A DNA stretch of 64,000 nucleotides from Podarcis erhardii (lineage: Eukaryota). The notes beneath the pieces are model-generated. The model had not been told where the DNA came from. It saw only the letters and a program-made list of their open reading frames with translations, and ran no database searches. A program made the position numbers and the translations under genes. Below, one piece after another: positions 9,530 through 13,663 of this stretch. The stretch lies in assembly GCA_964252035.1 (NCBI GenBank), contig OZ176200.1. One strand, 5' to 3'. Each line of letters starts with the position of its first letter. The stretch's first letter is position 1.

Positions 9530-9790
<261 letters not shown>

Positions 9791-11078: not shown

Positions 11079-11122
<44 letters not shown>
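11079..11122. repeat. (AT)22 tract, left flank of the Penelope-like insertion
   Basis: Direct reading. Confidence 0.95.
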
Positions 11123-11124
<2 letters not shown>

Positions 11125-11206
11125 TTTCGTAGATTTTCACGGGTACAGGAATGCAGGTTTTGGTGTCCTCGGGTGTCTTCCCGTGTAAAAGTTGGGGTGT
11201 CTAGGC

Positions 11207-11240
11207 GACGTTTCGACGAGGTCTCACTCGTCATCTTCAG
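11207..11240 (-). ncRNA. Minimal type I hammerhead ribozyme motif, left pseudo-LTR
   Basis: Exact reverse complement of 12541-12574. Confidence 0.7.
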
Positions 11241-11828
11241 GCTGGTGCTTTCGGCTTCTTGTTACTGGAACAGAGCAGGATCTCAGTGTTTGAGTTCCTA
11301 TAAATACTGTAGAGGGGGTGTGGTGTATAGCCTCCAATGTTCTGGGCAGAGAGGAAGTTCCCAGGCTAGTGTGCCTTTTCTTCTTTTGTTCCTTAATTAC
11401 TTGAGAGATATCTTGAGTGATTTCTTGAGTGATATCCTGAGTACCACTTAGGTGGGTCATTAGGTGTGGATTAGTTGTTAAAGTCTTTGTGTCTTGACCT
11501 CTTGAACTTTGTGAAGAGTTTTCCTGAGAAGATGGCTGTACTGTACTTAGTTGTGCTCTGGCTTGGCTTCGTGTATAGGGGCGAGCTGTGGTTTTGTGGC
11601 TTGTGTCAGCCAGATCTGTGTAGGGATTGCAGGGGGGTGCAGCATCCGGAGGTGCCACCATGGATTGGCTACTGGATGGTGTCTGTAATTCATCTGTGGA
11701 GAGGGTCTGGGTTTGGGTCTGGTGTGGTTGATTGGTGTTGGCGTTCTGTGTGCCTCTGGATCTGGTGTCAGTTTTTGTGGGGAGGGCTAATTTCCTCTCT
11801 TTTCTAAACTTCCTCTCTTTTCCAACAC

Positions 11829-12557
11829 ATGAAAGAAACAGGACACGAAATTAATTTTGCAGATTCCAAATTGCTCTTTAACACGGAACATCACCACAAG
11901 AGAATAATCATGGAAGCCATCGAGATAGAGAAACACCCTCACAACATGAACAAGCGTGACGACACATCCCGCTTGCCAGACATCTGGAAATTAGCCCTCC
12001 CCACAAAAACTGACACCAGATCCAGAGGCACACAGAACGCCAACACCAATCAACCACACCAGACCCAAACCCAGACCCTCTCCACAGATGAATTACAGAC
12101 ACCATCCAGTAGCCAATCCATGGTGGCACCTCCGGATGCTGCACCCCCCTGCAATCCCTACACAGATCTGGCTGACACAAGCCACAAAACCACAGCTCGC
12201 CCCTATACACGAAGCCAAGCCAGAGCACAACTAAGTACAGTACAGCCATCTTCTCAGGAAAACTCTTCACAAAGTTCAAGAGGTCAAGACACAAAGACTT
12301 TAACAACTAATCCACACCTAATGACCCACCTAAGTGGTACTCAGGATATCACTCAAGAAATCACTCAAGATATCTCTCAAGTAATTAAGGAACAAAAGAA
12401 GAAAAGGCACACTAGCCTGGGAACTTCCTCTCTGCCCAGAACATTGGAGGCTATACACCACACCCCCTCTACAGTATTTATAGGAACTCAAACACTGAGA
12501 TCCTGCTCTGTTCCAGTAACAAGAAGCCGAAAGCACCAGCCTGAAGATGACGAGTGA
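11829..12557 (+). CDS. Truncated Penelope-like ORF: C-terminal half of a GIY-YIG endonuclease plus a long low-complexity tail
   Basis: (TSSLFQH)MKETGHEINF...KRIIMEAIEIEKHPHNMNKRDD...LPDIW matches the recalled PLE endonuclease pattern H-x(4)-GH...R-x(3)-EAIEI...N...W. There is no RT domain, so the copy is non-autonomous. Confidence 0.8.
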   Translation: MKETGHEINFADSKLLFNTEHHHKRIIMEAIEIEKHPHNMNKRDDTSRLPDIWKLALPTKTDTRSRGTQNANTNQPHQTQTQTLSTDELQTPSSSQSMVAPPDAAPPCNPYTDLADTSHKTTARPYTRSQARAQLSTVQPSSQENSSQSSRGQDTKTLTTNPHLMTHLSGTQDITQEITQDISQVIKEQKKKRHTSLGTSSLPRTLEAIHHTPSTVFIGTQTLRSCSVPVTRSRKHQPEDDE

Positions 12558-12574
12558 GACCTCGTCGAAACGTC
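12541..12574 (+). ncRNA. Minimal type I hammerhead ribozyme motif, right pseudo-LTR
   Basis: CUGAAGA (CUGANGA box), extra U, stem II GACGAG/CUCGUC with loop UGAGAC, GAAA box, palindromic ACGU as stem III, and a GUC cleavage triplet ending at 12574. Stem I is only about 2 bp next to the core. Confidence 0.7.
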
Positions 12575-12625
12575 GCCTAGACACCCCAACTTTTACACGG
12601 GAAGACACCCGAGGACACCAAAACC

Positions 12626-12628
<3 letters not shown>

Positions 12629-12662
<34 letters not shown>
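12629..12662. repeat. (AT)17 tract, right flank of the Penelope-like insertion
   Basis: Direct reading. Confidence 0.95.
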
Positions 12663-12972: not shown

Positions 12973-13144
12973 CTGCTCAGAAGAAGCTAATGGCCGCACA
13001 AGCTCAGTTAAACCCTTCCACTGGTCCTGGGGCAGCAGAGTCTGTTGTGGAGACACGGACGACAGCAATGCAAATCACAAGGGACTTGCTTAGGAGCAAA
13101 GGCATCGCAGGACTTTATAAGGGACTTGGCGCTACGTTGCTAAG
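12973..13144 (+). CDS. SLC25A22: SLC25A22 internal exon ([10 protein letters not shown]...[23 protein letters not shown])
   Basis: AG at 12971-12972, GT at 13145, 172 nt. Phase is compatible with both neighbouring exons. Carrier motif GIAGLYKG. Confidence 0.97.
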
Positions 13145-13508
13145 GTAGGGCACCCCTTTAACCCTCTGGAGGACCTAAAATCCAAATGATGCCCAGTAGT
13201 CTGGGGTAACAACAAGGAATGAATAGGAACACCTGTTCCCTGGGTATTGACTCAGTTAGGGATGGGGACAGAGTGGGTAAGGGAGGGAGATGGCGATACA
13301 CTGCACTGGAGTTTCATAGTACTAAATGAGAACAGTGTAGAAAGAGAAATACCTGATGCATTTGAAAACTATGGAAAGGGGAATCTTCTTTCTGTGCACA
13401 ACTAACCACCCCTTACAACTGGCATGAGGCATGAGGCAGCTTGGTATTAAAGGACTAAAGGAAAGAGCTCTTCCCTTGTCCCTCATGGTCTTGCTTCTCC
13501 TTCTGCAG

Positions 13509-13663
13509 GGATGTACCGTTTTCCATTGTTTATTTTCCATTGTTTGCAAACCTGAACAAACTAGGGCAGACAACCCCAGATGTCAAGGCTCCATTCTATG
13601 TGTCCTTCCTTGCTGGGTGCCTGGCTGGCAGCACAGCAGCTGTAGCAGTGAATCCTTGTGACG
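13509..13663 (+). CDS. SLC25A22: SLC25A22 internal exon ([16 protein letters not shown]...AVAVNPCD)
   Basis: ttctgcAG acceptor, GTAGGT donor, 155 nt, frame continuous. Confidence 0.97.

What the first reader, a model, noticed from the sequence alone, without database searches (positions are those of the whole stretch)
12541..12574. Minimal hammerhead ribozyme in each pseudo-LTR, arranged so the two copies can mask each other
Seen: CUGAAGA-U-GACGAG[UGAGAC]CUCGUC-GAAA-CGUC at 12541-12574 (+) and its mirror at 11207-11240 (-). All core boxes, a 6-bp stem II, a palindromic ACGU stem III and a GUC triplet are present. Established: PLE pseudo-LTRs carry minimal type I hammerheads that work mainly as dimers through the palindromic stem III, and an extra nucleotide between A9 and G10.1 occurs in natural hammerheads. 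Inference: a self-cleaving motif sits on the sense strand of SLC25A22 pre-mRNA, with predicted cleavage after 12574. Because the partner copy is inverted rather than tandem, read-through RNA would base-pair the ribozyme shut. Stem I is weak (about 2 bp), so activity is uncertain.
Basis: partly seen in the sequence, partly recalled or inferred. Interest (0 to 1): 0.85.

Follow-up and report, generated by a model that had tools for sequence, protein, structure and literature searches.

The report
Penelope retrotransposon hammerhead, inverted pair
The motif is a real minimal hammerhead ribozyme of the kind already known from Penelope-like retrotransposons, carried twice in a young head-to-head insertion in a lizard intron, where it is most likely silent.

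Summary
CTGAAGA-T-GACGAG-TGAGAC-CTCGTC-GAAA-CGTC lies at 12541-12574 (+), with an exact mirror at 11207-11240 (-). The same descriptor found nothing in 300 simulated windows.

It sits at the end of a 5'-truncated Penelope-like element (PLE). The element has a GIY-YIG endonuclease tail, a perfect 645-nt inverted partial copy, a 28-nt "tail" and (TA)n on both sides. This is a textbook PLE insertion.

The motif has the same build as the tested Poseidon_Ac hammerhead of Anolis: a bulged U, a 6-bp stem II, GAAACGUC, and the element's AUG at A9-U-G10.1. Stem II covaries between relatives. The 34 nt are identical in agamid copies that are otherwise 72-80% identical.

Rfam models miss it, which fits a hammerhead with almost no stem III.

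Read-through RNA folds into a 645-bp duplex that buries the ribozyme. The inverted layout is a by-product of PLE integration, not a masking device.

Cleavage at this locus is unlikely: there is no sense partner in cis, stem I is 2 bp, and the Anolis ribozyme needs its own protein.

The scan has noted PLE hammerheads elsewhere in this genome. This is a new member of a known kind, of low interest.

The parts
12541..12574 (+). Minimal hammerhead motif of the right arm. CUGAAGA 12541-12547, bulged U 12548, stem II 12549-12554 with 12561-12566, loop II 12555-12560, GAAA 12567-12570, CGUC 12571-12574. The cut is predicted after 12574.
   Evidence: covariation; same build as the PAc hammerhead read
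11207..11240 (-). Identical hammerhead motif of the inverted left arm. The cut is predicted between 11207 and 11206 on the - strand.
11806..12630 (+). The longer 5'-truncated PLE copy. It runs from inside the GIY-YIG endonuclease domain to the proximal end point of the insertion. 11986-12630 is the right arm of the inverted repeat.
   Evidence: 98.9% identical to L001 over 835 nt
11151..11795 (-). Inverted, shorter 5'-truncated PLE copy (left arm), 100% complementary to 11986-12630.
11123..11150 (-). 28-nt PLE 'tail', present on the left arm only. It continues the element's 5' ORF region (…SCTRENLRK) and matches the equivalent stretch of L007.
   Evidence: tail concept from PMC8557442 and PMC11167929
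11796..11805 (.). 10-nt filler (tctcttttct) at the head-to-head junction. The 13-mer ttcctctcttttc occurs at 11792-11804 and again at 11810-11822.
   Evidence: read directly
11829..12557 (+). Remnant of the PLE ORF: the end of the GIY-YIG domain plus a T/Q/S/P-rich extension of about 190 aa. Its stop codon TGA (12555-12557) lies in loop II of the hammerhead.
12547..12630 (+). Start of the next PLE ORF. Its ATG (12547-12549) is A9, the bulged U and G10.1. It reads MTSETSSKRRLDTPTFTREDTRGHQNLH. The same reading frame on the left arm runs 11234 down to 11123.
   Evidence: same arrangement as PAc
11079..11122 (.). (TA)n microsatellite on the left flank, the likely target.
12631..12662 (.). (TA)n microsatellite on the right flank, the likely target.
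   Evidence: L001 and the Phrynocephalus copies also end in (TA)n

Best explanation
The motif is a genuine minimal (dimer-type, type I) hammerhead ribozyme belonging to a Poseidon-like Penelope-like retrotransposon (PLE) of a lizard.

In the element's own tandem transcripts the ribozyme straddles the junction between one unit and the next. The ORF of one unit stops in loop II. The next ORF starts at A9-U-G10.1. Self-cleavage after GUC, about 25 nt past that AUG, would process the multimeric RNA. That cleavage probably needs a second ribozyme copy, which would supply a 4-bp ACGU/ACGU helix III, or the element's own protein, or both.

What sits in this window is a dead product of one integration into a (TA)n tract in an intron of a + strand mitochondrial-carrier gene. 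It is an 825-nt 5'-truncated copy joined head-to-head to a 645-nt inverted copy. The two insertion ends lie 84 and 112 nt after the AUG.

At this locus the ribozyme is most likely inert, for three reasons. Host read-through RNA pairs it into a 645-bp perfect duplex. There is no sense-strand partner in cis. No intact PLE protein is encoded here.

Shown here: the motif, its context, its conservation and covariation, the gene orientation and the duplex fold. Inferred: catalytic competence, by homology to the tested Anolis ribozyme, and silence at this locus.
For: Motif and mirror at the stated coordinates. No chance hits in 300 simulated windows.

PLE context:
- The ORF 11829-12557 has lizard relatives carrying the GIY-YIG and HTH_animal Pfam families.
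- L001 shows the full GIY-YIG domain upstream of the same motif.
- The inverted copy, the tail and the (TA)n target match the published PLE anatomy (PMC8557442).

Conservation: the 34 nt are identical in L001, in the intact Phrynocephalus forsythii copies and in L006. Elsewhere these elements are only 72-80% identical.

Covariation in stem II:
- L007 has GACAAA/UUUGUC. That is two compensatory pairs, with 100% of cells paired.
- Poseidon_Ac has GCCUGC/GUGGGC. Read by eye from the published consensus, that is three compensatory changes and one one-sided change.
- The L007 changes alter the encoded amino acids, so the RNA pairing was kept at the protein's expense.

Same layout as PAc. [quoted passage not shown] C3G or G8C abolish cleavage and the double mutant partly restores it. 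Cleavage occurs only with PAc protein. Reverse transcription starts at +111-118, with the tail lying between two start sites (PMC11167929). Here the ends lie at +84 and +112.

Published min-HHR features (PMC4209133): a bulged nt between 9 and 10.1, G10.1-C11.1, a palindromic 15.2-16.2, a helix I as short as 2 bp in D. virilis, and dual motifs on opposite strands 100-700 bp apart.

Masking: the 1480-nt read-through folds as a 645-bp duplex at -1396 kcal/mol.
Against: No cleavage was or could be measured here.

- Stem I is only 2 bp and never varies, so nothing supports it beyond its presence.
- No Rfam hammerhead model scores the motif.
- Two-strand folding does not predict the dimeric hammerhead as the lowest-energy state.
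- Published min-HHRs cleave poorly in vitro.
- HHR mutants did not affect PAc insertion in vitro, and no RNA-seq ends were found at the PAc cut site.
- The covariation rests on few independent sequences. One of them (L007) has U4 changed to A in the core. The PAc comparison was made by eye.
- The identity of the 34 nt between lizard families could partly reflect the overlapping stop and start codons.
Confidence: 0.84

Rival explanations
1. The sense-strand copy at 12541-12574 is active at this locus. It cleaves the host gene's pre-mRNA or intron by dimerising in trans with other PLE transcripts, or with help from PLE protein made elsewhere in the genome.
For: All core nucleotides are intact and the copy is very young: the arms are 100% identical and a 98.9% identical sister copy exists. 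The motif is in sense with the host gene. The homologous PAc ribozyme cleaves when its protein is present. Earlier notes of this scan report PLE junctions at predicted cut sites elsewhere in this genome (untested).
Against: The complementary arm is transcribed first. The hairpin would zip from its loop outward, so the complement is already in place when the ribozyme emerges, and the duplex is 645 bp at -1396 kcal/mol. The window holds no second sense copy. Stem I is 2 bp. Min-HHR activity in vitro is low. No RNA-seq ends were found at the PAc cut site in Anolis.
Confidence: 0.07
2. The hammerhead resemblance has no catalytic role. The block is conserved because it holds the overlapping stop codon of one ORF, the start codon of the next, and the adjacent protein-binding and RT-initiation region.
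For: The stop TGA (12555-12557) and start ATG (12547-12549) both lie inside the motif. The sequence downstream of the motif (ACACGGGAAGA-ACCCGA) is about as conserved as the motif. HHR mutants do not affect PAc insertion in vitro. HHR-free PLE clades proliferate well.
Against: A full hammerhead core with a 6-bp G-C-closed stem II is not expected by chance (0 in 300 simulations). Stem II changes are compensatory and alter the encoded amino acids. PAc cleavage responds to C3G, G8C and the double mutant as a true hammerhead should.
Confidence: 0.06
3. The perfect palindrome, and hence the second mirrored hammerhead, is an assembly artefact such as a fold-back chimera, not a real genomic structure.
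For: The arms are 100% identical over 645 nt. Complex PLE insertions are known to trouble assemblies.
Against: The structure is asymmetric in the way real PLE insertions are: a 190-nt unique spacer, a 10-nt filler, and a 28-nt tail on one side only. The same inverted-copy-plus-forward-copy layout occurs at three independent Phrynocephalus loci. Both ends abut the same (TA)n tract.
Confidence: 0.03

Closest known systems
Poseidon_Ac (PAc) hammerhead of Anolis carolinensis (Mob DNA 2024, PMC11167929)
   Same: Same order of parts: CUGANGA, a bulged U, a 6-bp stem II, a loop of 6-7 nt, GAAA, CGUC. The element's AUG is formed by A9, the bulged U and G10.1. The cut lies 25-26 nt after the AUG. Stem I is very short (3 bp in PAc, 2 bp here). 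The insertion ends lie about +84 and +112 here; PAc starts reverse transcription at +111-118, with a 30-40 nt tail. Targets are AT-rich. The host is a squamate.
   Different: The stem II sequence differs at four of six pairs, with pairing kept. Loop II is 6 nt, not 7. Here the upstream ORF runs on into loop II and stops there, whereas PAc has a 126-nt untranslated gap. Activity of this family has not been tested.
Minimal hammerheads of metazoan Penelope-like elements (Cervera and De la Pena 2014, PMC4209133; Lunse, Weinberg and Breaker, RNA Biol 14:1499, cited in PMC6765202)
   Same: Location in the PLE terminal repeat. An unpaired nt between 9 and 10.1. G10.1-C11.1. A long helix II. Helix III reduced to a palindrome that can pair only in a dimer. 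A short helix I. Pairs of motifs on opposite strands a few hundred bp apart were already described.
   Different: Nothing fundamental. This is a lacertid-type family not listed in the papers read. The Lunse paper itself was not held in the library and was not read.
Canonical type I hammerheads (Rfam Hammerhead_1 and relatives; newt and Schistosoma satellite ribozymes)
   Same: The same 11-nt catalytic core, the GUC cleavage triplet and the type I topology.
   Different: There is no hairpin helix III, no recognisable loop I-loop II tertiary contact, and a 2-bp helix I. The Rfam covariance models do not report it.

Membership tests
Hammerhead ribozyme (catalytic core) | C3 U4 G5 A6 N7 G8 A9 box | tested here: met
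   CTGAAGA at 12541-12547 and its mirror. Invariant in 5 of 6 aligned relatives; L007 has A at position 4.
Hammerhead ribozyme (catalytic core) | G12 A13 A14 followed by A15.1, with U16.1 and H17 at the cleavage site | tested here: met
   GAAA at 12567-12570, then C G U C, so U16.1 = 12573 and C17 = 12574. Invariant in intact copies.
Hammerhead ribozyme (catalytic core) | Helix II closed by G10.1-C11.1 and supported by covariation | tested here: met
   6 bp, GACGAG/CUCGUC. Two compensatory pairs in L007, with 100% of cells paired. Three more compensatory changes against the PAc consensus, read by eye.
Hammerhead ribozyme (catalytic core) | Helix I flanking the core and the cleavage site | tested here: inconclusive
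   Only C-G and G-C can pair (20-21 with 56-57 in A2). Both never vary, so there is no evidence either way.
Hammerhead ribozyme (catalytic core) | Match to a curated Rfam hammerhead covariance model | tested here: not met
   No hammerhead hit at gathering score, nor at E<=10 on 1.8 kb or on 86 nt. This is expected for a motif without a helix III hairpin.
Hammerhead ribozyme (catalytic core) | Site-specific Mg2+-dependent self-cleavage | not testable with these tools
   Shown only for the homologous PAc motif, and only in the presence of PAc protein (PMC11167929).
PLE minimal hammerhead (Cervera and De la Pena 2014) | Lies in the terminal repeat of a Penelope-like element, next to an RT/GIY-YIG ORF | tested here: met
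   The ORF remnant has GIY-YIG and HTH_animal relatives in lizards. L001 shows the full GIY-YIG domain upstream. The RT part is absent from this truncated copy.
PLE minimal hammerhead (Cervera and De la Pena 2014) | Unpaired nucleotide between A9 and G10.1, and a longer than usual helix II | tested here: met
   U at 12548 and a 6-bp helix II. The feature is described in PMC4209133.
PLE minimal hammerhead (Cervera and De la Pena 2014) | Helix III reduced to a palindromic 15.1-16.1 stretch able to pair only between two copies | tested here: met
   ACGU at 12570-12573. RNAcofold does not make this 4-bp helix the lowest-energy state, which fits the weak activity reported.
Poseidon_Ac-type junction | The element's start codon lies at the start of stem II, with the cut about 26 nt after it | tested here: met
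   ATG at 12547-12549 and the cut after 12574, which is 25 nt later (loop II is 1 nt shorter).
Poseidon_Ac-type junction | Insertion ends at internal RT start sites, with an optional tail of about 30 nt between them and an AT-rich target | tested here: met
   The ends lie at +84 (12630) and +112 (11123) from the ATG. The tail is 28 nt. (TA)n lies on both flanks.

The most novel reading that the evidence does not exclude
In this lizard PLE family the ORF fills the whole unit. It starts at the AUG inside the hammerhead core (A9-U-G10.1) and, one unit later, stops at a UGA in loop II only 5 nt downstream of the next AUG. Folding or cutting of the ribozyme and translation would then exclude each other. 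A unit-length RNA cut at two hammerheads and then ligated would be a circle with almost no non-coding sequence. The ribozyme could therefore act as the switch between the messenger role and the template role of the RNA.
Probability: 0.1. Interest if true: 0.55.

Novelty: new member of a known kind. Interest (0 to 1): 0.2.

Why it matters
It matters little beyond annotation. It adds a lacertid-type family to the PLE hammerheads. It gives independent covariation support for stem II of the Poseidon-type ribozyme. It is also a natural example of an insertion whose two ends fall where the Anolis in vitro work places the two reverse-transcription start sites.

For the host gene, the relevant consequence is the 645-bp perfect intronic hairpin, not the ribozyme. 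That hairpin is the subject of another note of this scan.

Tried and rejected
- Rfam scans at gathering score and at E<=10, on 64 kb, 1.8 kb and 86 nt, gave no hammerhead hit. I read this as a limit of the models, not as evidence against the motif. The MIR2646 hit is only the inverted repeat.
- Pfam on the 242-aa ORF remnant gave nothing. The GIY-YIG assignment rests on relatives.
- Folding of the 100-nt monomer shows only stem II and no better stability than shuffles (z = -0.3). RNAcofold of two copies does not predict the dimeric hammerhead.
- The Lunse et al. paper on dimeric PLE hammerheads is not held.
- The metagenome scan returned only distant PLE-like loci. Only one of them, L008, carries min-HHR-like motifs.
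The stem II comparison with PAc is by eye, and no formal clade placement (Poseidon versus Neptune) was made.
- The name SLC25A22 was not verified.
- The window is lizard, not human. Its nearest relatives are from Podarcis muralis and Phrynocephalus forsythii.

Full report
**Observation.** The window reads CTGAAGA T GACGAG TGAGAC CTCGTC GAAA CGTC at 12541-12574 on the + strand. The exact reverse complement lies at 11207-11240.
- the CUGANGA and GAAA boxes;
- a 6-bp stem II closed by G10.1-C11.1, which also forms in the free-energy fold;
- one extra U between A9 and G10.1;
- an ACGU palindrome in place of helix III;
- a GUC triplet that puts the cut after 12574.

Helix I is limited to two pairs, C-G and G-C. 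A descriptor with these features found only these two sites in the window. It found none in 300 simulated 64-kb sequences with the same dinucleotide make-up, so chance is excluded. Rfam's hammerhead models do not report the motif at any threshold tried. That fits a hammerhead without a helix III hairpin. Such motifs were found in the literature with relaxed descriptors, not with these models.

**Context.** The two motifs lie in a 645-nt inverted repeat that is 100% complementary, 11151-11795 against 11986-12630, with 190 nt between the arms.
- The + strand ORF 11829-12557 is the end of a GIY-YIG endonuclease ORF followed by a T/Q/S/P-rich extension.
- Its relatives come from lizards (Podarcis muralis, Phrynocephalus forsythii). 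Two of them carry precomputed GIY-YIG (P0003) or HTH_animal (P0005) Pfam hits.
- A 98.9% identical sister copy from a public read assembly (L001) shows the whole GIY-YIG domain upstream of the same motif, and also ends in (TA)n.

[quoted passage not shown] The longer copy starts at 11806, inside the endonuclease domain. It is joined to the inverted copy through a 10-nt filler that repeats a nearby 13-mer. On the left arm only, 28 further bases (11123-11150) continue the element. They align with the equivalent stretch of a distant relative, L007. Both ends abut (TA)n.

This is the published anatomy of PLE insertions: strong 5' truncation, an inverted 5'-truncated copy next to the main one, a 30-40 bp tail at one end, and a microsatellite target (PMC8557442). 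Three Phrynocephalus loci show the same inverted-plus-forward layout. That argues against an assembly artefact.

**What the motif is.** Cervera and De la Pena (PMC4209133) defined minimal hammerheads in PLE terminal repeats by the features seen here:
- a conserved G10.1-C11.1 pair;
- a long helix II;
- palindromic 15.2-16.2 positions, so that helix III forms only between two copies;
- a short helix I, 2 bp in Drosophila virilis.

They also noted pairs of motifs on opposite strands 100-700 bp apart.

The closest tested relative is the hammerhead of Poseidon_Ac (PAc) from Anolis (PMC11167929). Joining the end and the start of its published consensus gives CUGAGGA-U-GCCUGC-CAUAGAU-GUGGGC-GAAA-CGUC. 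The order of parts is the same, and in both elements A9, the bulged U and G10.1 form the start codon. Here ATG is 12547-12549 and the cut lies 25 nt later. In PAc it lies 26 nt later, with a loop one base longer.

The paper reports the following for PAc:
- C3G or G8C abolish cleavage, and the double mutant partly restores it.
- Cleavage occurs only when PAc protein is present.
- Reverse transcription starts internally at +111-118.
- The tail is the stretch between two start sites.

In the window the two insertion ends lie at +84 (12630) and +112 (11123) from the ATG, which fits that picture well. [quoted passage not shown] That gives a simple origin for head-to-head copies.

**Conservation and covariation.** The 34 nt are identical in L001, in the intact Phrynocephalus copies and in L006. 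Elsewhere these elements are 72-80% identical to the window's. Decayed copies carry scattered, uncompensated hits.
- A more distant tandem junction (L007) has GACAAA/UUUGUC in stem II. That is two compensatory pairs, with all cells paired. Slid controls drop to 25-60% paired.
- Against PAc, three more pairs change on both sides and one changes on one side (by eye).
- The L007 changes alter the encoded N-terminal residues. The pairing, not the peptide, was kept.

Caveats:
- The independent sequences are few.
- L007 has A at core position 4.
- Helix I never varies.
- The block downstream of the ribozyme is about as conserved as the ribozyme itself. It probably corresponds to the protein-binding and initiation region mapped in PAc.

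**Host gene and masking.** A stop-free + strand segment within 9530-9790 scores as Mito_carr. Further carrier-like exon peptides lie on the + strand near 13040-13150 and 13507-13620. The peptides look like glutamate carrier SLC25A22/18 from memory, but the gene name was not tested.

The 1480-nt read-through RNA folds into an uninterrupted 645-bp duplex at -1396 kcal/mol, with the ribozyme inside it. The antisense arm is transcribed first and the hairpin would zip from its loop outward. The complement would therefore already be in place when the ribozyme emerges (inference).

Four other points make cleavage of the host transcript unlikely:
- there is no second sense copy in the window;
- helix I is 2 bp;
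- published min-HHR activity is weak;
- the PAc ribozyme depends on its protein.

The masking is a physical consequence of the way PLEs integrate, not a designed arrangement.

**A feature seen on the way.** In this family the ORF does not stop after the endonuclease domain. It stays open through the extension and stops at TGA 12555-12557, in loop II.
- L006, at 41% amino-acid and 73% nucleotide identity, ends at the same codon with the same HQPEDDE end.
- Frame 0 has no stop, against 7-16 stops in the other two frames. Composition predicts 7-10 stops. The extension is therefore truly kept open.

Stop and start thus lie 5 nt apart inside the ribozyme, whereas PAc has a 126-nt gap. This raises the untested idea that ribozyme folding and translation compete at the unit junction.

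**Verdict.** The thing is a new family-level member of a well-described kind. Its nearest relative has already been tested at the bench. Earlier notes of this scan report other PLE hammerheads in the same genome. They were used only as context.

Noticed in passing
window 11829-12557 (+); L006 59-730: The PLE ORF stays open for about 190 aa beyond the GIY-YIG domain and stops at a TGA in loop II of the hammerhead, 5 nt after the next ORF's ATG. L006, at 41% aa identity, uses the same stop. Frame 0 has 0 stops against 7-16 in the other frames, so the unit seems to be almost wholly coding.
   Followed up: partly
window 11123-11150 (-); L007 1236-1263: The 28-nt stretch found only on the left arm aligns with the ORF 5' region of a distant PLE (…GTACCCGTGAAAA.ATACGAA…). 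It is therefore the PLE 'tail'. The two insertion ends lie at +84 and +112 from the ATG, close to the two RT start sites mapped for Anolis Poseidon.
   Followed up: partly
window 11792-11822: The head-to-head junction carries a 10-nt filler (11796-11805). The 13-mer ttcctctcttttc occurs twice, at 11792-11804 and 11810-11822. This looks like a template switch at the join of the two copies.
   Followed up: no
window 9530-9790, about 13040-13150 and about 13507-13620 (+): Exons of a mitochondrial-carrier gene on the + strand flank the insertion (Pfam Mito_carr for the first). The peptides …[29 protein letters not shown]…, …[15 protein letters not shown] and [16 protein letters not shown]… resemble glutamate carrier SLC25A22/18 from memory. 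The name was not verified.
   Followed up: partly
L003 13422 (-) and 7357 (-); L008 3606 (+) and 2866 (+): Other min-HHR-like motifs with a bulged A and stems II of 4-7 bp, for example CTGACGA-a-GCTGTTT…GAGCAGC-GAAA. They occur in Phrynocephalus DNA and on a metagenome contig near a PLE-like ORF, and are probably other PLE families.
   Followed up: no
L007 1137-1143: This tandem PLE junction has CAGAAGA instead of CUGAAGA (U4 to A) while keeping a compensated stem II. It is either a dead copy or a core variant.
   Followed up: no
window 11744-12037 (-): Rfam MIR2646 matches below threshold (52.8 bits against a 245-bit gathering score). The match is simply the inner part of the inverted repeat, not a microRNA gene.
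   Followed up: yes
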